Below, one piece after another: positions 43,801-54,656 of a stretch of 64,000 nt of DNA. Source of the stretch: Magallana gigas. Taxonomy: Eukaryota. Each line of letters opens with the position of its first letter. Within the stretch, counting starts at the first letter, position 1. The notes under the pieces were generated by a model. The model was not told the DNA's origin, ran no database searches, and saw only the letters and a program-made list of their open reading frames with translations. The DNA is taken from contig NC_088855.1 of assembly GCF_963853765.1 (NCBI RefSeq), positions 31,806,001 through 31,870,000 of the forward strand. Reading direction: 5' to 3'. The position numbers were made by a program, and so were the translations under genes.

Positions 43801-44276
43801 TGGACAGGAAGGATGAAAATTATCCACACAGTGAACAGAAAGGATAAGAATTATCAGCAATAAACAACATTCCATTTCATCAACTGGTTACTTTGTTTAT
43901 TAATGCTACGAGTTTAATAATAAAAAATAAAATGTATTCTTTAGATGTTGGGTATTTTATTTTACTGTGACACTTCTTTAGATTGCGAGATTAAATCAAT
44001 AGCATGTCAATGGTGATATTAAGACAAATAGCATAACAGATAAAATGGATAATCCGCATCCAAATTACGTACATGTACTTAATATCATCAATGTTCAAAT
44101 AAATTGAATTAAAGGAGCAAATATAATTTTATTGCAGTAACAAAAGGCTTTTTGTAAACATCTATAAAAATATTAATTTAGTCTTACTTTTTCTTTTCGG
44201 ACTGGTATAATAATATTTACCCCTTTTTTCATTTGCATCTTTTCTATGGCCTGAGTTGTATTATTTGTATTGAATA

Positions 44277-44490
44277 CTGTGAAATCATTAAAATTCGTGG
44301 GGACCTAAATTCGTGGATTGTTTAAAATTTACAGGTTCGTGGGGACAAAATTTCGTGTATTCTTTTATACCTACAAAAGGAAATATGACTTTATAACCCT
44401 ATAACGTCTAAGAGGATATAGATTTTTAGGTGAGAGGTACCCACGAATTCCACGAAAATTGAGCCATCACAAAATCTAATGATTCCACAG
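44277..44490. mobile_element. MITE with CTGTGGAATCATTA-type TIRs and TA TSD (Tc1/mariner-type); second copy at 49256-49480
   Basis: ta|CTGTGAAATCATTA ... TAATGATTCCACAG|ta. Confidence 0.8.
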
Positions 44491-46576
44491 TATTTCAATT
44501 TGTTCATTTTGTCTTTGATGTAGGAAGACTGCTAAAATAGACCGTGCCTGCTGCCTAATTTCATTTAATATACTGCAATGAATAAAATATTGTTGAAATA
44601 AAAATGATTCGGCCTGATATACTAGTAATTGGGGAGGGGGGAGGGTGTCATACACGTATGAGAAATCTGAAAGTGAGAACTTGATCAGGTTTTTGTGGAA
44701 TAAACATGATAAACCATGATGGAATAAATGGGCTCGATGATCTTGGCCATTTTTAGACTGTATTAATCTTCTTCAAAAGGAGAGCTTTATATCAGAATAT
44801 AGGAAATTTAAAAGGTGAATTACATATTTGCTACAAAAAAATAGTTTATAGCTTAAGAAATCATATCTTAAAATTGAAGGAAGATCTGATGACTTATCGG
44901 CCGACCACGCAGCTTCCGTTAGTACAATGTGACTAACAACATATATAATGACTGGATACATGCCAAAACCACAGGCAGGATAAATTCATTATGATTCTTG
45001 AAAATTCAAAGATTGCCCTCCTCGAACATTGACCTGGTTAATCAGACGTTTAGACTAAACAATTTTAAAATACGTGAATTAATTATTACTTCGATCCGGA
45101 TATCGCGGATAATGAAAGTTATTTGAAAAGGGACACTTGCTTTAAATTTTACATCAACTATCAATTCACTTAGGGGAAAAAATCATAATGGGTATCTGTA
45201 AACAAATGTTTTAGATTGTACAATCCTTTATGTCAACGACTGAAAAATCACTTAAATGTTTCAGAAACAAGAAAATCAATAGATAGTTAAATTCGGAGAT
45301 GAATAAGATATATTGTATTATAATCAATAGAAAAAAAAATCAGGAACAGATTGGTCTAAACAGCCATAGTAAAAATGTTTCTTTCATAAAGTACGTTTAC
45401 CAATGATAAATTTTCTACAGGTGCCATCTTGATTTTCTCTCAGGATACCGTGGGTGCCCTTCTTTGACCAATAGGTTTTAAGCGTGAAGTTTTGATAGTG
45501 AAATTTCCGTGAAGTTGTGGTTGACCCGGTATTGATTCAAGTTGTTCATAAAAAAAAAATTATCAATACAAGAAAGCAAGACTTGGTTGAAATTTATACT
45601 AATGCACGTATTTGGAAACAATAACAAAACTTGAGTTTTGTTTACAAAACACAGAGTAACGCTTTTGACTTGATATTTGACAATCAAATTTAATGAAACA
45701 TTTAAGATACCCTAAATAACAATTCAATCACTAATTAAAATATATGGGGAAATAATGAATTTTAAAAATACTGAGTTCGAATAGTGTAGAGGTCCCTTTG
45801 AAAGACAACCGCATTAGTTGATTACAAATGTATAAAAGATTTAAGATATATAATAATTATAATTATACAAGTACTTATTTATTCAAACTAAAGATGTAGC
45901 TTGTCAAGGATATTTTGACATTGCATCCTACTTAAGGCATTACAACTGCCTTATACTTTCATGTTATTTCCTACCATCTTATCATTTTGTCTAAGTGGGA
46001 ACTAGGTGCAACCGCACCGGATTGGCGTTGGCGTATTTTTTGCAGAGATGCGAGAAAATCTGTTAAACTGATTTTAACACAACAATGTTACGTGAAGGTT
46101 AAGTGGAAATCGTTTTTGTTTTTGCCGATCAATTTTTATCATGTGTTAGTAATAAAAGTTGGATGAAAAGAAAATGTAGTTGTTGTTTTTTTTCCTGCTG
46201 CTCGGTTGTTATTGAGTCTATGTCTATACATAACATCTTTGGTGTATCATTCAATAAGTCAAAGTCTTGTTGTCAATTTGAAATCTTGTTTTGTTTCAAA
46301 GACATTTAGGTTATCTATTGAAATTTATATAACCAAATATTTTTACTATACTTTCATGTTAAATACTGAAATCTGATTGGTTTATACGCAGTTGATAATC
46401 CGTTCTATTACCCTCAGCGTTTGCAACACAGTTGGCAACGGGTAACACAACGAATTGTTACATGCCCGTAAATTATGCATGCGCGTACGGTTCGCCGTAG
46501 AATTCACGTCATTTTTATATAAAAGCAGTAATAATTTCTCTAAAATTAAGACATTCAGTATAATAAAATAAAAAAA

Positions 46577-46701
46577 GCCTGTTTGGGAGGATAAAAGTTG
46601 AAATTGACACCCCGAGGAAACATTTGTTAACCTCCGCTTCACGTCGGTTGACAGTGGTTTTCTCGGGGTGACAATTTTAACTGCTACCCTCCCAAACAGG
46701 C
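46577..46701. repeat. Long imperfect hairpin within an unclassified non-autonomous element; second copy at 51586-51710
   Basis: gcctgtttgggagg...aattgacaccccgaggaaac pairs with gttttctcggggtgacaatt...cctcccaaacaggc. Confidence 0.7.
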
Positions 46702-47911
46702 ACTATTTATATATTATATCCAAAATTTGAGTGTTATATACTAGTACTTTATGTACTTATAACCCGCGCTTTGCTCTTTAGCCTTAAAACCGAATTCAAT
46801 ATACAGTAATTATTTGACTCTTTTGCTTGCATGTCTCACTTATTTGCATCTTTACTCAGTCGAGAATCTTCAGATCATCTAATATTCTTCACTTTTGAAC
46901 ACGTTCTAAAAAAAAAGCCACCAACGCATGCAAAAGAAGCCATTGCACCAAAAGTGAGTTGCGTATTGTATATGTGACGTCATAATTGATCCCGGTATTT
47001 ATTACTGGAGACAACTCAGTATGTATCCAAAACGTCCATTAAACATGTTTTATAAAATAATCAGTTGAAATCGAGAGATTTAATGAAATTTCAATGGGTA
47101 TGCTGGTTTGATGGGTAAAAACGGATGGTCCCAAGAAAGAAGCTGCCATAAGACCATTACTTATATACTTACTTATCTTTCGGGGAAAATATGAAATACA
47201 AAAAAGGTAAAATAAAAAAAAATAATTCACTAATAAATATTATTTCAAAGAGAAAACGATAATTTACATTTTATTTGCCATGAGCTTAATCTGTCCTCCA
47301 GGGTTATAAAAAATCGTGATACCTAATTTCCGTTGGGGGCTACATGTAGGTCCTCTGAGCCCTCTACCTGCTCAGTCGTAAAATCTTCTTCTTCTTTTTT
47401 AATTCACCGCGTCAACGCTTGGATGTTGCATATGTAACATTACATTAAAAATAACGAAAAGACCAAACAACACTGAATACTTCGAATCTTTAAAATCGAT
47501 TCTAGGCCAAGAAATTCAGTATATAAAGCAATCGGCACGAGCAATGAAAATTTTCAAATTTTCAAGATGAGTCATCCGAATCCTTTTTCATGTCAAATGC
47601 AGAAGTTAGTACCTAAATTCTAATTTTTTAAATAATAGTTTTAAAAAATACCAACACCACTTGTACACTGTCACATAAAATTACAAAACGAGCATGGAAA
47701 AACGGCTTTATGATGGGGAGTTTGTAAGAAAATCCAAATGATTTAGGTAAAGTTTAATATATTATTAACAATAAATATGATTTATACAAGAGAGTAACGA
47801 AATTAAACTCTGTTGGGGAAGGGGGGGGTGGATAAATAGAAATTGTGACTGGTTTAAAAAATGTGAAATAAATCCACACACCCAGCACTGGCCAGCAGTC
47901 TTTCATACAGA

Positions 47912-47994
47912 TGTCTTTTACTAATTAACAATTTTTAATTGTTAATGAGTCCTTGACTCACTGACAATTAAAAATTGTTAATTAGTAAAAGACA
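47912..47994. mobile_element. Centre-deleted copy of the TGTC...GACA palindromic element (83 bp)
   Basis: Same arms as 12855-12956 with a shorter centre; flanks caga/caaa. Confidence 0.8.
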
Positions 47995-48077
47995 CAAAGG
48001 TTAAACATTTCTTACTATAACTGACATGTATAAATTCAAAAGCTTTTAAAAATGATTTTATTGTGTATGTTATAAGT

Positions 48078-48997
48078 TCAAGTTCTTTATTCCAAGAGAC
48101 AAATGTCTCATAGGTTATACATATGAACATATACATATTAAATAAACAGTAAGAAAAACATAGTGTACATAATCAATTTGGATAATTCACATGGAGAGTT
48201 CGTTGCTTGTTTGCATAATATAAATATTTACCTAAATTGCACAGTTCTTTAGTATTAGAGGTAGATAATAACTGTATAACTTTATAGACACTTGGTTTTC
48301 GGGAGTAGTATTTTTTAATATACTTATCTCTTAAACTACAAAGTGATGGACAAATAAGTAAAAAATGGAACTCATCTTCAATTACATTTAAGTTGCAAGA
48401 TTCACATTTTCGACAATCACGCGTTAAATTATCATGCCTCCCTGTTTCAATCTTTAAGTCATGTGAGGACAACCGTAAGCGTGTAATTAATTTACGATAT
48501 TTTACATGAATTGGTTTCTTTAGGTAAACTTGTAAACAAAAATGATCAACAACATGTTTATATAATATACATTTTGATGCATTGCTTATATCGTTAACAA
48601 CTTTTTGTTTAAAGACATCACACATTCTATTAAATATAATATCTAAAATAACAGACTCTTTCATAGTACTTTGATATAAATCGGCTAAGCCTAAGATGGA
48701 CAATTCTTTCCTAATATTTGAAATCCAGATGTCATTATTTTTCACCATGTCTTCGTAGCATGCTTTTAAAATACAGTTTTTACTGATTCTTAATTTAAAC
48801 CAGTATTTAAAAAAAATTTTGTTTCCTGAAAATCTCTAATGGAAATCTACCTACTTCATAATAAACTGCACTGTTGCAAGTATTTTTTCTGACACCCAAA
48901 ACCTTCTTACAAAAATTTATATGGACTTTTTCTACATCTTGACCTTTATGGAATCCCCAAATTTCAGCACCATAACTAAGTACACTTTTTACATAAG
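48078..48997 (-). mobile_element. 5'-truncated non-LTR retrotransposon 3' fragment (RTE-X/L2-like, distinct from the 35-37 kb copy)
   Basis: ORF 48173-48748 (RLRLSSHDLKIETGRH...CxxC...EDEFHFLLIC) continues upstream in a shifted frame (YVKSVLSYGAEIWGFH...EVGRFPLE) to ~48997. The 3' end has AATAAA-GAACTTGAA at 48078-48095. Confidence 0.9.
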
Positions 48998-51900
48998 TAT
49001 TAAGGCAAATAGCATAACAGATAAACTAGATAAACCGCATCCTAATTACGTACATGTACTTAATATTATCAATGTTCAAATAAATTGAATTAAAGGAGTA
49101 AATAATCTTATTGCAGCAACAAAAGGCTTCTTGTAAACATCCATGAAAAAAATAATTTAGTCTTACTTTTTCTTTTCATACCGATATAATAATATTTACC
49201 TCTTTTTTCATTTGCATCTTTTCTATAGCCTGAGTTGTATTATTTGTATTGAATACTGTGAAATCATTAAAATTCGTTGGGACCAAAATTTGTGGATTGT
49301 TTAAAATTTACAGGTTCGTGGGGACATAAATTCGTGTGTTCTTTTATACCTACATGTACAAAAGGAAATATGACTTTATAACCCTATTTCATTAATTCGT
49401 GGAGGATATAAATTTTTAGGTGAGAGGTACCCACGAACTCCACGAAAATTGAGCCATTACGAAATCTAATGATTCCACAGTATTTCAATTTGTTCATTTT
49501 GTCTTTAATGTAGGGAGACTGCTAAAATAGACCGTGCCTGCTGCCTAATTTCATTTAATATACTACAATGAATAAAATATTGTTGAAAAAAAAAAAGATT
49601 CGGCCTGATATACTAGTAATTGGGGAGGGGGAGGGGGGGAGGGTGTCATACACGTATGAGAAATCTGAAAGTGAGAATTTGATCAGGTTTTTGTGGAATA
49701 AACATGATAAACCATGTTGGAATAAATGGGCTCGATGATCTTGACCAATTTTAGACTGTATTAATCTTCTTCAAAAGGAGAGCTTTATATCAGAATATAG
49801 GAAATTTAAAAGGTGAAATACATATTTGCTACAAAAAAAAGTTTATAGCTTAAGAAATCATATCTTAAAATTTAAGGAAAATCTGATGACTTATTCGCCG
49901 ACCACGCAGCTTCCGTTAGTACAATGTGACTAACAACATATATAATGACTGGATACATGCCAAAACCGCAGACAGGATAAATTCATTATGATTCTTGAAA
50001 ATTCAAAGATTGCCTTCCTCGAACATTGACCTGGTTAATCAGACGTTTAGACTAAACAATTTTAAAATACGTGAATTAATTATTACTTCGGTCCGGATAT
50101 CGCGGATAATGAAAGTTATTTAAAAAGGGACACTTGCTTTAAATTTTACATCAACTATCAATTCACTTACGGGAAAAAAAATCATAATGGGTATTTGCAA
50201 ACAAACGTTTTAGATTGTACAATCCTTTATGTCAACGACTGAAAAATCACTTAACTGTTTCAGCAACAAGAAAATCAATAGATAGTTAAATTCGGAGATG
50301 AATAAGATATATTATATTATAATCAATAGACAAAAATCAGGAACAGATTGGTCTAAACAGCCATGGTAAAAATATTTCTTTCATATAGTACGTTTACCAA
50401 TGACAAATTTTCTACAGGTGCCATCTTAATTTTCTCTCCAGATATTTTTTTTCCGTATGTGTCCTTCTTTCACCAATAGGTTTTAAGCGTGAAGTGTTCA
50501 TAGTGAAATTTCCGTGAAGTTTTGGTTGTCCCGGTATTGATTCAAGTTGTTCATTAAAAAGAAATTATCAATACAAGAAAGCAAGACTTGGTTGAAATTT
50601 ATACTAATGCACGTATTTGGAAACAATAACAAAACTTGAGTTTTGTTTACAAAACAAAGAGTAACGCTTTTGACTTGATATTTGACAATCAAATTTAATG
50701 AAACATTTAAGGTACTCTAAATAACAATTCAATCACTAATTAAAATATATGGGGAAATAATGAATTTTAAAACAAAAGTTCGAATCGTGTAGAGGTCCCT
50801 TTGAAAGACAACCGCATTAGTTGATTACAAATGTATAAAAGATTTAAGATATATAATAATTATAATTATACAAGTACTTATTTATTCAAACTAAAGATGT
50901 AGCTTGTCAAGGATATTTTGACATTGCATCCTCCTTAAGGCATTACACCTGCCTTATACCTTCATGTTTCCTATCATCTTATCATTTTGTATAATGGGAA
51001 CTAGGTGCAAAAAAGAGATATTTACGCGCCGGATTGGCGTTGGCATATTTCTTGCAGAGATGCGAGAAAATCTGTTAAACTGACTTTAACACAACAATGT
51101 TACGTGAAGGTTACGTGGAAATCGTTTTTGTTTTTGCCGATCAATTTTTATCATGTGTTAGTAATAAAAGTTGGATAAAAAGAAAATGTAGTTGTTTTTT
51201 TCCTGCTGCTCGGTTGTTATTGAGAGATTGTAGGTGTTTATACTTAACATCTTTGGTGTATCATTCAATAAGTCAAAGTCATGTTGTCAATTTGAAATCT
51301 TGTTTTGTTTCAAAGACATTTAGGTTATCTATTGAAATTTATATAACCAAATATTTTTACTATACTTTCATGTTAAATACCGAAATCTGATTGGTTTATA
51401 CGCAGTTGATAATCCGTTCTACTACCCTCAGCGTTTGCAACACAGTTGGCAACGGGTAACACAACGAATTGTTACATGCCCGTAAATTATGCGCGTACGG
51501 TTCGCCGTAGAATTACGACATTTTTATATAAAAGCAGTAATAATTTCTCTAAAATTAAGACATTCAGTATAATAAAATAAAAAGAGCCTGTTTGGGAGGA
51601 TAAAAGTTGAAATTGACACCCCGAGAAAACATTTGTTAACCTCCGCTTCACGTCGATTGACAATGGTTTTCTCGGGGTGACAATTTTAACTGTTACCCTC
51701 CCAAACAGGCACTATTTATATATTATATCCAAAATTTGAGTGTTATATACTAGTACTTTTTGTACTTATAACCCGCGCTTTGCTCTTTAGCCTTAAAACC
51801 GAATTCAATATACAGTAATTATTTGACTCTTTTGCTTGCATGTCTCATTTATTTGCATCTTTACTCTGTCGAGAATCTCAGACCATCTAATTTTTTTTAA

Positions 51901-52705
51901 CTTTTGAACACGTTCTTAAAAAAGCCACCAACGCGTGCAAAAGAAGCCATTGCACCAAAAGTGAGTTGCGTATTGCATATGTGACGTCATAACTGATCTC
52001 GGTATTTATTACTGGAGACAACTCAGTATGTGACCAAAACGTCCATTAAACATGTTTTATAAAATTATCAGTTGAAATCGAGAGATTTAATGAAATTTCA
52101 ATAGGTATGCTGGTTTGATGGGTAAAAACTGATGGTCCCAAGGAAGAAGCTGCCATAAGACCATTACTTATATACTTACTTATCTTTCGGGGAAAATATG
52201 AAATACAAAAAAGGTAAAATAAAAAAAAAATAATTCACTGATAAATATTATTTCAAAGAGAAAACGATTATTTACATTTTATTTGCCATGAGCTTAATCT
52301 GTCCTCCAGGGTTATAAAAAATCGTGATACCTAATTTCCATTGGGGGCTACATGTAGGTCCTCTGAGCCCTCTACCTGCTCAGTCGTAAAATCTTCTTCT
52401 TCTTTTTTAATTCACCGCGTCAACGCTCGGATGTTGTATATGTAACGCTAAAAATAACGAAAAGACCAAACAACACTGAATACTTCGAATCTTTAAAATC
52501 GATTCTAGGCCAAGAAATTCAGTATATAAAGCAATCGGCACGAGCAATGAAAATTTTCAAATTTTCAAGATGAGTCATCCGAATCCATTTTCATGTCAAA
52601 TGCAGAAGTTAGTACCTAAATTCTAATTTTTTAAATAATAGTTTTAAAAAATACCAACACCACTTGTACACTGTCACATAAAATTACAAAACAAGCATGG
52701 AAAAC

Positions 52706-54034
52706 GGTTTGTTCCCGTTTTGCACACATTTGAAAATGTGGTATCAAAAAAATGTGTGCGAAACGGGAATTTGACCAGGTGAGATAATTGCATAATTGCT
52801 ATAGTCTATATCACAATTCCCGCGAGGGTAATTGACAATAAAATAAGTAAAACATATTTACTCGCAATTTATATTTACATTTTATTTTATCTTACAATAT
52901 AAATTGCATAAAAGCACATTTACATAATAATCACCATCCATATTCATGAATTTGATTTCAAACATTAATTTGGTCATGAACAATTTTTTTATTTTTATAA
53001 ATAAGAAAGATTATTGCAAAAATGTTGAATATGTAGCGCCTTTGTTTAACTTACTGCCTATATAGGAAGAACATGTACACGCTAAAAATTTGAAGAGAAA
53101 ATATCATATGTTAATATTTAATTATCGCTTTTGCTGACATAAATGGAGGAGATGTGTCTTGTGAAAACACTGCTTAACATTTTTCATTGATGTTGTGGCT
53201 TGAAAAATCGAAGAAATAGACAAACTGTATGCCGATAAATCGGCAATTTTATATGCTTCAAAAACTGTAAAGATTATTTCACAAAACCTATTAAATGTAG
53301 ACCTAATTCATGCATTTTCAACCTTTTTCAGTTTTAGTTATATCGCATAAATATTGAAATATTATTTTTGTCAGAATTTTTTATGTATTTAACCTCTGAT
53401 TTGAAAAACTAGAGAGTGACCCGCCATAAACTAAAGCGATGATGTCATAAGAACTACCGTCAAGGTTGCTACTTCAAAGATTGAAATATTTTGTGATAAA
53501 GATCTGTTTTCTTTCATAATATTCTTTCTGTTGATACCAAACAATCAATTATAAACATGTCTTTTACATAATTTGCAACTCAATTATAAAAAGAGACACG
53601 GAGTACCCCATATGACTGTCCTTGTAGTTTTCCCCTTCATCATATAACTATCCATTGAATCAGCTTCCAATTGGCTTGGGACCAGCAATTTTTTCTGATT
53701 CATTTTGTTTAAATTTAAGGTAAATGGACAAAAATTTGAAAGTCAAATCATCTAATCATTATTTGTTTTAATAAGTGTGTGGAAATTGAAGACTTTTTTA
53801 AATATATCATTATCTTTATCTAATCAAACGAAAAAAATGGTGATAGTTATTAGACCTAAAACACAACAAAATGTCTACATTCTTCTTGTTTTATCGTTAA
53901 GGTGCTGATAAAAGACAGGTAAAAAAACCAGGTAAAATCTTTGACCGAAAGCAGACTATAATTGCTATCACAACACAATTCACACCTATTGTTCTATACC
54001 CAATTATCAAATGTGTGCAAAACGGGAACACACC
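52706..54034. mobile_element. Non-autonomous DNA transposon, 28-bp TIRs, 8-bp TSD (Merlin/MULE-like GG...CC termini)
   Basis: tggaaaac|GGTTTGTTCCCGTTTTGCACACATTTGA ... TCAAATGTGTGCAAAACGGGAACACACC|tggaaaac. The empty site is visible at ~47696-47712. Confidence 0.9.
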
Positions 54035-54236
54035 TGGAAAACGGCTTTATGATGGGGAGTAAATGATTTAGGTAAAGTTTAATATATTATTAACAATAAA
54101 TATGATTTATACAAGAGAGTAACGAAATAAAACTCTGTTGGGGAAGGGGGGGGTGGATAAATAGAAATTGTGACTGGTTTAAAAAATGTGAAATAAATCC
54201 ACACACCCAGCACTGGCCAGCAGTCTTTCATACAAA

Positions 54237-54319
54237 TGTCTTTTACTAATTAACAATTTTTAATTGTTAATGAGTCCTTGACTCACTGACAATTAAAAAT
54301 TGTTAATTAGTAAAAGACA
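54237..54319. mobile_element. Centre-deleted copy of the TGTC...GACA palindromic element with caaa TSD
   Basis: caaa at 54233-54236 and 54320-54323. Confidence 0.8.
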
Positions 54320-54446
54320 CAAAGGTTAAACATTTCTTACTATAACTGACATGTATAAATTCAAAAGCTTTTAAAAATGATTTTATTGTGTATGTTATAA
54401 GTGAACTGCACACCGACTTCAATGTTTTAGGAGCTCTATCCTTGTA

Positions 54447-54656
54447 ACATCTTCGCTAGCCAGGGGTTTTCGATACACTTCGCTTCTCATAAACCATTGT
54501 AAATTGCCGGTCAATTTTCATTGGAGAGTTGCAGTCGGTCGTGGAACCGTTTACAGTTAACGACCTTGAACTTTTAAAATGGTCAAAATACCAAAAAAAA
54601 TTCGGATCGTTTATTAAAAGCGTAGTGTATCGGAAACCCTTGGCTAGCGAAGATGT
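54447..54656. mobile_element. 210-bp MITE with ~33-bp TIRs and a 7-8-bp TSD
   Basis: (t)ccttgta|ACATCTTCGCTAGCCAGGGGTTTTCGATACACT ... AGTGTATCGGAAACCCTTGGCTAGCGAAGATGT|ccttgta. Confidence 0.8.

What the first reader, a model, noticed from the sequence alone, without database searches (positions are those of the whole stretch)
44017..54402. LINE fragment exactly filling the junction of a ~4-kb direct duplication: a candidate kilobase-scale target-site duplication
Seen in sequence: copy 1 (44017-48077) ends exactly where the 3' tail of a minus-strand LINE begins (48078). The LINE's truncated 5' end reads as RT-region codons (..NTYVKSVLSYG) up to ~48997-49003 and runs straight into the start of copy 2, sharing a ~6-bp tattaa microhomology with the sequence at 44017. 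No other filler is present. Established: target-primed reverse transcription gives direct TSDs, usually 5-20 bp, and 5'-truncated junctions often show microhomology. Inference: second-strand cleavage or repair occurred ~4 kb from the first nick, or the LINE cDNA patched a break that made a tandem duplication. Either would make this LINE family a generator of kb-scale duplications. A TIR element later landed only in copy 2, which dates the events relative to each other.
Basis: partly seen in the sequence, partly recalled or inferred. Interest (0 to 1): 0.72.

Follow-up and report, generated by a model that had tools for sequence, protein, structure and literature searches.

The report
LINE fragment bridging a 4-kb tandem duplication
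A broken-off piece of a young jumping gene (a LINE) sits exactly between two copies of an otherwise unique 4-kb stretch, as if its insertion had duplicated the target; this kind of event is already known from human cells and a green alga, and here it could not be confirmed in raw reads.

Summary
Copy 1 (44017-48077) and copy 2 (48998-54402) are the only two copies of this 4,061-bp unit in the 564-Mb genome. The 920 bp between them is the 3' end of a young, multi-copy APE+RT LINE on the minus strand. It ends at the family's true (GAACTT)n tail, overlapping copy 1 by 4 bp. Its truncated 5' end overlaps copy 2 by 3 bp (TAT), not 6. There is no other filler and no LINE at the outer flanks. A single aberrant target-primed reverse transcription event that bridged to a DNA end 4 kb away is the best reading (about 0.5).

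Three things temper it:
- Copy divergence is uneven (7.4% at the left end, about 1% at the right). Over the left half it exceeds what the LINE's age predicts, and the TIR element found only in copy 2 belongs to an old-looking family. The copies may therefore have been two alleles when they were joined.
- No other family copy tested has an unambiguous long target-site duplication (usual size 6-10 bp).
- Read and cross-assembly tests were unavailable, so an assembly artefact, or an unequal crossover between two allelic LINE insertions, is not excluded.

Kilobase LINE target duplications are already documented (human L1, Chlamydomonas Dualen). The scan holds other unchecked notes of similar cases in this genome. 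Verdict: a new member of a known kind, of moderate interest.

The parts
44017..48077 (.). Copy 1 of the 4,061-bp duplicated unit (lacks the TIR element)
   Evidence: The only other full copy in the genome is copy 2. Homology with copy 2 starts at 44017 and ends at 48077.
48074..48077 (.). 3' junction overlap AAGT, shared by the end of the unit and the LINE hexamer tail; the likely primer end for reverse transcription
   Evidence: Other family copies stay homologous down to 48074. Copy 2 ends with the same AAGT at 54399-54402.
48078..48997 (-). 5'-truncated LINE fragment: ORF2 C-terminal ~275 codons (frameshift at 48810/48811), ~98-nt 3' UTR with AATAAA, and two GAACTT tail units
   Evidence: It is 98.8% identical to an intact-ORF2 copy (L031). 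There are 7 private and 2 shared non-majority differences in 920 bp.
48998..49000 (.). 5' junction microhomology TAT, shared by the LINE (family reads ...AAGTATCAAAAA) and the start of the unit
   Evidence: alignment of 28 family copies, the window and copy 1's left flank.
48998..54402 (.). Copy 2 of the duplicated unit, interrupted by the TIR element
   Evidence: The right flank from 54403 (GAACTGCAC...) is unrelated to the LINE.
52706..54034 (.). Non-autonomous TIR element (~1.33 kb) present only in copy 2, flanked by an 8-bp TSD TGGAAAAC (52698-52705 and 54035-54042)
   Evidence: (I6). A dispersed family with at least 40 copies; the nearest relatives are 92-93% identical.
47695..47703 (.). 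Empty TIR insertion site in copy 1 (TGGAAAAAC), with no excision footprint
46341..46716 (.). Dispersed ~375-bp repeat inside the unit (also in copy 2 at about 51350-51725); it predates the duplication
   Evidence: unit positions 2325-2700, thousands of candidate matches; I1, I3, I4.

Best explanation
One aberrant retrotransposition event made both the insertion and the duplication.

Proposed steps:
1. The plus strand was nicked after ...TTATAAGT (the position now at 48077 and at 54402).
2. Its AAGT end paired with the (GAACUU)n tail of the LINE RNA.
3. Reverse transcription ran for about 920 nt.
4. The cDNA end was then joined, through a 3-nt TAT microhomology, to a DNA end lying 4,061 bp upstream of the nick instead of the usual 6-10 bp.
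5. Fill-in synthesis left the 4,061-bp segment on both sides of the LINE.

Shown: the anatomy, the true 3' terminus, the microhomologies, the uniqueness of the unit, and the family's normal short TSDs.

Inferred: the order of steps, and where the second end came from. It could have been a distant nick on the same duplex (a literal giant TSD), a break on the sister chromatid (the model drawn for human L1 in PMC7058536, Fig. 7b), or a break on the homologous chromosome. The uneven and partly excessive copy divergence, together with an old-looking TIR element present in only one copy, favour the homologue, meaning the two copies were already alleles when they were joined.
For: - The unit has only two copies in 564 Mb.
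- The filler matches a young APE+RT LINE family.
- The fragment ends inside the family's variable (GAACTT)n tail, beyond which other copies have unrelated flanks. This points to RNA-templated, tail-primed synthesis.
- Primer-like 3-4-nt complementarity to the tail is also seen at other copies' TSDs (TGACGTA, TTGACAGA, TGAATA).
- Family copies are 5'-truncated at many different points.
- There is a 3-bp microhomology at the 5' junction.
- There is no other filler, no N run near the junctions, no family LINE at the outer flanks, and no other large duplication in the window.
- The LINE's age (0.76-0.98% per lineage) agrees with the right half of the unit (1.17% per lineage, p = 0.38-0.73).
- Precedent: L1 TSDs over 1 kb in 18 recovered inserts (PMC5223499); Dualen LINE insertions flanked by duplications of median 900 bp in mutation-accumulation lines (PMC9977147); L1-bridged tandem duplications (PMC7058536; PMC11702581).
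Against: - There was no read-level or second-assembly confirmation.
- Copy divergence is heterogeneous (chi-square 48.6, 15 df, p = 2e-5). The left half (2.39% per lineage, p = 0.001-0.006) and the left 500 bp (3.7% per lineage, p about 1e-5 to 1e-4) are older than the LINE. Copies that were identical at birth do not predict this.
- The TIR family's nearest relatives are only 92-93% identical, so the insertion may predate the event.
- No unambiguous second example was found in this family.
- The same sequence can arise from two allelic LINE insertions joined within the LINE.
Confidence: 0.5

Rival explanations
1. Assembly artefact. The two copies are the two haplotypes of a single-copy region laid in tandem. 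The most concrete route is two different heterozygous insertions of this 99%-identical LINE family, one at each boundary on different haplotypes, through which the assembler made a chimeric join.
For: - The copy divergence (3.56% on average and strongly uneven) and a TE presence/absence difference look like allelic variation.
- The LINE is a high-identity repeat.
- Neither reads nor other assemblies could be consulted.
- Earlier notes on this genome report other unconfirmed joins (s1-356089, s1-359008; unchecked).
Against: - There is no N gap at or near the junctions.
- The LINE/copy-2 junction must exist on some real molecule, so this route needs two independent same-orientation insertions of a family with about 230 candidate matches to its 3' end within 4 kb, plus a mis-join inside 920 bp or less.
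- There are no other false-duplication signs in the 64-kb window.
Confidence: 0.2
2. A real unequal crossover. Two ordinary insertions of the same LINE family lay 4 kb apart in the same orientation on different homologues (one at 48077, a 920-bp one at 44017). They recombined within the LINE, giving unit-LINE-unit on one product and a deletion on the other.
For: - It predicts exactly the observed sequence, with both junctions being ordinary TPRT junctions.
- A 7-bp TSD, TATTAAG, at the left site would end in AAG, which can pair with the tail as at other copies.
- It explains allelic-type uneven divergence and the TIR difference.
Against: - It needs three events instead of one.
- The family has only about 230 candidate matches in 564 Mb, so two insertions within 4 kb in the right orientation is a low-probability configuration.
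- No mosaic signal can be seen in the 920 bp.
Confidence: 0.15
3. A DNA-level replication error (template switching of the FoSTeS/MMBIR type) made the tandem duplication and copied 920 bp from a LINE elsewhere in the genome as templated filler.
For: Short microhomologies (3-4 bp) at both junctions are also typical of template switching. Templated insertions at duplication junctions are common (my own knowledge).
Against: The filler ends inside the LINE's 12-nt tail at a tail length seen in other copies. A random DNA template segment would do this less than about 0.5% of the time. The orientation and the tail-primer complementarity fit TPRT.
Confidence: 0.05
4. An older LINE-free tandem duplication existed, and the LINE later inserted exactly at its junction.
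For: On average the LINE looks younger than the copies.
Against: It requires an insertion at one specific position out of about 4,000, with no TSD and no loss of either copy's end. Both unit ends coincide with the LINE ends to within 3-4 bp.
Confidence: 0.02

Closest known systems
Kilobase-scale target-site duplications of human L1 in cultured cells (Servant et al. 2017, PMC5223499; earlier Gilbert 2002/2005 and Symer 2002, as cited there)
   Same: A single 5'-truncated LINE insert is flanked by direct copies of the target that are hundreds of bp to more than 1 kb long. The proposed cause is a second nick or DNA end far from the endonuclease nick.
   Different: Those are engineered L1 elements with poly(A) tails in somatic culture, mostly in NER-deficient cells. 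This case is a natural insertion of a hexamer-tailed LINE in an invertebrate assembly, with copies that are 3.6% diverged.
Dualen-4b LINE insertions with flanking duplications (median 900 bp) in Chlamydomonas mutation-accumulation lines (PMC9977147)
   Same: A LINE insertion is bracketed by a kb-scale direct duplication positioned like a TSD.
   Different: In Dualen it is the rule (more than half of insertions) and is attributed to two endonucleases (RLE plus APE). Here it is an exception in a family whose usual TSD is 6-10 bp, and only an APE-type endonuclease domain was detected.
L1-bridged tandem duplications in cancer genomes and L1-overexpression models (PMC7058536 Fig. 7; PMC11702581 Fig. 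5)
   Same: A short L1 sits at the junction of a direct tandem duplication, with the endonuclease or priming site at the 3' breakpoint. The model has the cDNA joining a break on another chromatid.
   Different: The sizes there are 64 kb to 22.6 Mb and the events are somatic. Here the size is 4 kb, the event is apparently germline, and the partner may have been the homologue rather than the sister chromatid.
R9 LINE of bdelloid rotifers with a 126-bp TSD (Gladyshev and Arkhipova 2009, as cited in PMC9977147)
   Same: A non-LTR element with a TSD far longer than usual.
   Different: R9's long TSD is a constant, site-specific property of that element. Here it is a one-off.

Membership tests
APE-type LINE (non-LTR retrotransposon), 5'-truncated TPRT insertion | The family encodes an ORF2 with an apurinic-type endonuclease and a reverse transcriptase | tested here: met
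   L031 ORF2 (1,014 aa): RVT_1 at E = 2.8e-34; Exo_endo_phos_2 at E = 1.3e-5, which is just under Pfam's cutoff. The window fragment matches ORF2 residues 740-1014 at 94-99%.
APE-type LINE (non-LTR retrotransposon), 5'-truncated TPRT insertion | The insert ends at the family's own 3' terminus or tail | tested here: met
   27 copies end in ...GGAATAAAGAAC(TTGAAC)n followed by unrelated flanks. The window copy has two hexamers, as do L009 and L018.
APE-type LINE (non-LTR retrotransposon), 5'-truncated TPRT insertion | Variable 5' truncation among copies, with microhomology at the 5' junction | tested here: met
   Truncation points differ between copies. There is a 3-bp TAT overlap in the window.
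APE-type LINE (non-LTR retrotransposon), 5'-truncated TPRT insertion | A short TSD (6-10 bp in this family) | tested here: not met
   The flanking direct repeat is 4,061 bp. The other copies have 6-10 bp TSDs.
LINE clade (L1, L2, CR1, RTE, Jockey and others) | Placement of the RT in a reference phylogeny | not tested
The only observation is a microsatellite-type tail rather than poly(A).
LINE-bridged tandem duplication / giant TSD | One LINE insert, and nothing else, lies between two direct copies of unique DNA, with the 3' end at a priming site | tested here: met
LINE-bridged tandem duplication / giant TSD | The copies and the insert are of the same age (copies identical at birth) | tested here: inconclusive
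   The right half is consistent with this, the left half is not (p = 0.001-0.006), and the heterogeneity has p = 2e-5. This is compatible only if the copies were alleles or if mutation rates differ along the unit.
LINE-bridged tandem duplication / giant TSD | The structure is present on single DNA molecules with matching copy number | not testable with these tools
LTR retrotransposon (the two copies read as LTRs) | The LTR sequence is multi-copy in the genome, and the internal region encodes gag/pol in the same orientation | tested here: not met
   The unit is present only twice. The internal 920 bp is a LINE 3' end on the opposite strand. No Pfam or Rfam match was found in the unit.
hAT-like non-autonomous TIR element (the copy-2 insertion) | Terminal inverted repeats and an 8-bp TSD | tested here: met
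   About 46-nt imperfect TIRs (I6) and the TSD TGGAAAAC. An 8-bp TSD also fits P-type elements, and the transposase was not examined.

The most novel reading that the evidence does not exclude
In this bivalve genome, LINE integration may fairly often resolve with a distant second DNA end, sometimes on the homologous chromosome. This would give a long tail of germline 'TSDs' from about 50 bp to several kb, making LINEs a regular source of small tandem duplications and presence/absence variation. The window would be the largest example among several that first readers noted in this genome (51 bp, 198 bp, ~515 bp, 0.9-1.7 kb, 1.19 kb; all unchecked).
Probability: 0.15. Interest if true: 0.65.

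Novelty: new member of a known kind. Interest (0 to 1): 0.4.

Why it matters
If the structure is real, it is a natural, inherited example of a LINE insertion that duplicated 4 kb of its target. It lies in an invertebrate and involves a LINE with a hexamer-repeat tail rather than poly(A). Until now this has mostly been documented in engineered human L1 assays, tumours and one green alga. It would show that the mechanism operates in animal germlines and can seed small segmental duplications.

The uneven divergence raises a testable extra point: the bridging partner may have been the homologous chromosome, which would amount to a LINE-mediated unequal exchange. The duplicated DNA carries no recognisable gene or RNA, so no functional consequence is evident. 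If the structure is an artefact, it marks a specific failure mode of assemblies of highly heterozygous genomes, namely joins through young LINE copies.

Tried and rejected
- **More genome letters:** I could not fetch 10-kb contexts for 35 more LINE copies or visit the loci named in earlier notes.
- **Alignment:** a one-piece MAFFT alignment of the two copies misplaced the 1.3-kb insertion. I redid it piecewise.
- **Pfam on the fragment:** there were no hits on the LINE fragment's own ORFs. The domains were found only in a longer family copy.
- **Rejected readings:** the unit as a mobile element or LTR; NAHR between LINEs flanking the unit on one chromosome; 3' transduction, because there is no tail at 44017 and the geometry is wrong.
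- **A retracted inference:** I briefly read 'homology starts at the LINE junction' at L007 and L008 as support for further cases.
- **LINE clade:** not determined.
- **LINE age:** estimated only by counting differences from the majority of copies.


Full report
**What is there.** A repeat scan of 40-58 kb finds one pair of long direct repeats and nothing else of that size in the whole window. Reading the junctions gives these coordinates:
- copy 1: 44017-48077
- filler: 48078-48997
- copy 2: 48998-54402

Copy 2 is longer because a 1,329-bp element with terminal inverted repeats lies at 52706-54034. It is flanked by an 8-bp duplication, TGGAAAAC, and copy 1 has the uninterrupted site TGGAAAAAC. 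The left flank of copy 1 and the right flank of copy 2 are unrelated to each other and to the filler. The only N runs in the window are at 4820-4968 and 6339-6477, far from this region, and I left them alone.

**The filler is a LINE 3' end.**
- On the minus strand it reads as the last ~275 codons of an ORF2, with one frameshift at 48810/48811. About 98 nt of 3' UTR containing AATAAA follow.
- The window's genome (564 Mb, 29 contigs) holds at least 40 scored matches out of 229 candidates, up to 99% identical.
- A longer copy (L031) has an open 1,014-codon ORF2 with RVT_1 (E = 2.8e-34) and an Exo_endo_phos_2 endonuclease match (E = 1.3e-5, just under Pfam's cutoff).
- Copies are 5'-truncated at many different points.
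- In 27 copies the element ends ...GGAATAAAGAAC followed by a variable number of TTGAAC/GAACTT hexamers. After that, the flanks are unrelated.
- The window copy ends with two hexamers, like L009 and L018. So it stops at the family's true 3' terminus, not at an arbitrary internal point.
- I did not determine the clade. What the sequence shows is a microsatellite-type tail instead of poly(A).

**Junction detail.**
- Other copies stay homologous to the window down to 48074. The bases AAGT (48074-48077) could therefore belong either to the unit (copy 2 ends with the same AAGT at 54399-54402) or to the tail.
- At the other end the family reads ...ACATAAGTATCAAAAAC, the window reads ...ACATAAGTATTAAGGC, and copy 1 with its flank reads ...GGTGATATTAAGAC. 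The perfect overlap is TAT (48998-49000), or 5 of 6 bases.
- Where TSDs of other copies can be read, they are 6-10 bp (TGACGTA, TTGACAGA, TGAATA). They begin with bases that can pair with the tail, as AAGT does here.

**The unit is not a repeat.** A whole-genome search with copy 1 returns only itself and copy 2 at full length. All other hits fall on a ~375-bp dispersed repeat at unit positions 2325-2700. Six of its longer ORFs (62-97 codons) have no Pfam match, and there is no Rfam match. The only other LINE-like sequence in the window is a distant relative (33-36% amino-acid identity) at 35.6-37.6 kb. This excludes recombination between LINEs flanking the unit on one chromosome, and it excludes reading the copies as LTRs.

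**Timing.**
- The copies differ at 143 of 4,018 aligned sites (3.56%; 87 transitions, 56 transversions) and by 24 indel events.
- The LINE fragment differs from the majority of 26 family copies at 7 private and 2 shared positions in 920 bp, which is 0.76-0.98%. I only counted these differences and wrote out no consensus.
- If the LINE and the duplication were born together from one template, each copy should be about as diverged as the LINE. The average per-lineage value is 1.78% (binomial p = 0.011-0.044 against the LINE).
- The divergence is strongly uneven. It is 7.4% in the first 500 bp, 2.2-5.0% across the next 3 kb, and 0.8% in the last 500 bp (chi-square 48.6, 15 df, p = 2e-5).
- The right half (1.17% per lineage) fits the LINE (p = 0.38-0.73). 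The left half (2.39%) does not (p = 0.001-0.006), and neither does the left 500 bp (3.7%, p about 1e-5 to 1e-4).
- The left-end alignment is clean, with scattered point changes.
The opposite tension exists.
- The TIR element's closest relatives among the scored genomic copies are only 92-93% identical. That suggests an old family and an insertion that may predate the LINE event. A cut-and-paste element need not leave a close sibling, so this is suggestive only.
- Together these points fit two copies that were already diverged alleles when they were joined. The alternatives are rate heterogeneity along the unit or gene conversion on both sides of the TIR element.

**Is the family a habitual duplicator?**
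- Sixteen other 5'-truncated copies (about 14 independent; L003/L032 are the same place, and L022/L024 are a segmental duplicate) show no flank-to-flank repeat. With the flanks I held, this test is sensitive to roughly 30 bp to 2-3 kb, and to about 6 kb for L032-L034.
- For larger sizes I searched the genome with the 3' flanks of further young copies. L006, L009, L010, L012 and L013 have no nearby high-identity second copy.
- L007 and L008 lie in locally repeated DNA and are uninterpretable without more sequence.
- So the window is an exception in this family.
- Earlier notes of this scan list other LINEs in this genome bracketed by 51-bp to 1.7-kb repeats, and a tyrosine-recombinase retroelement between identical 2.2-kb copies. 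These are unchecked notes, and I could not visit those places. The same notes call the genome Pacific oyster, which I did not verify.

**Mechanism.** The most economical account is one TPRT event:
1. A plus-strand nick after AAGT.
2. Priming on the hexamer tail.
3. About 920 nt of reverse transcription.
4. Joining of the cDNA, through TAT, to a DNA end 4,061 bp upstream of the nick.

That end could be a distant nick on the same duplex (a literal giant TSD), a break on the sister chromatid, or a break on the homologue. The timing data lean towards the homologue.

Two rivals give the same sequence and cannot be separated here:
- Two ordinary allelic insertions of this family, 4 kb apart, joined within the LINE by a real unequal crossover.
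- The same two insertions joined by an assembler.

Both need more events, in a family with only about 230 candidate matches to its 3' end in 564 Mb, so I rank them lower. Template-switch filler is unlikely because the filler ends within the 12-nt tail. A later insertion exactly at an older duplication junction is very unlikely.

**What is known.**
- Large TSDs of human L1 are experimentally documented. They occur in fewer than 10% of events in HeLa cells but in 57-91% in NER-deficient cells, with 18 inserts over 1 kb (PMC5223499).
- In Chlamydomonas mutation-accumulation lines, more than half of Dualen-4b insertions carried flanking duplications, with a median of 900 bp (PMC9977147).
- L1-bridged tandem duplications, and the model of the cDNA joining a sister-chromatid break, are described for tumours and L1-overexpression models (PMC7058536; PMC11702581).
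- The finding is therefore a new member of a known kind. What would be new is a natural, apparently germline example in an invertebrate, involving a hexamer-tailed LINE and possibly the homologue.

**Limits.** The reality of the structure on single molecules, the existence of an empty allele, and recurrence across the genome therefore remain untested.

Noticed in passing
L007 = G000:C8:47844262-47848182, and C8:47818002-47874554 by coordinates only: About 20 bp after the tail of a LINE copy of this family, a tandem array begins with a ~6.66-kb period and 100% identity. Units start at C8:47846711, 47853380, 47860043, 47866709 and 47873371. A further 98% copy lies 28.7 kb upstream. The first ~550 bp of the unit is a dispersed repeat.
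   Followed up: partly
L008 = G000:C9:47566561-47570479; C9:47481710 and C9:47533180; C10:22.58-22.62 Mb: The 3' flank of this LINE copy has two 97-98% copies on the same strand, 36 and 87 kb upstream. It then runs into a 368-bp piece of a satellite that forms 1.55-kb-period arrays on contig 10.
   Followed up: partly
window 47912-47994 and 54237-54319: An 83-nt near-perfect palindrome (two 40-nt arms, 95% complementary, 3-nt loop) lies about 83 bp from the LINE priming site in each copy. It could be a fragile or stalling site near the first nick.
   Followed up: no
window 54447-54656: A MITE-like inverted repeat (51-nt arms, 88% complementary, 108 nt apart) lies 45 bp to the right of copy 2.
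   Followed up: no
window 35576-37649, minus strand: A second, unrelated and older LINE: 33-36% amino-acid identity to the family's ORF2 over residues 311-979.
   Followed up: no
window 46341-46716 and about 51350-51725: A ~375-bp dispersed repeat with internal inverted halves lies inside the unit. The genome search found thousands of candidate matches, sometimes in short tandem or inverted clusters (for example C7:24922798-24924645).
   Followed up: no
L022 (G000:C1:69769697-69773615) and L024 (G000:C1:69863266-69867184): Two LINE copies 94 kb apart share the same truncation point and the same flanks. This is a segmental duplication that carried a LINE insertion along.
   Followed up: no
L011, L021, L022/L024: In these copies the best 9-10-bp flank matches lie 8-32 nt upstream of the 5' end and 29-52 nt downstream of the tail. 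These may be TSDs separated from the element by extra nucleotides or a short 3' transduction, or they may be chance.
   Followed up: no
L031:3822-4727: A Tc1/mariner-type transposase ORF (HTH_Tnp_Tc3_2 and DDE_3) lies about 0.7 kb upstream of the start of the longest LINE ORF2 examined (L031:5442-8486).
   Followed up: no
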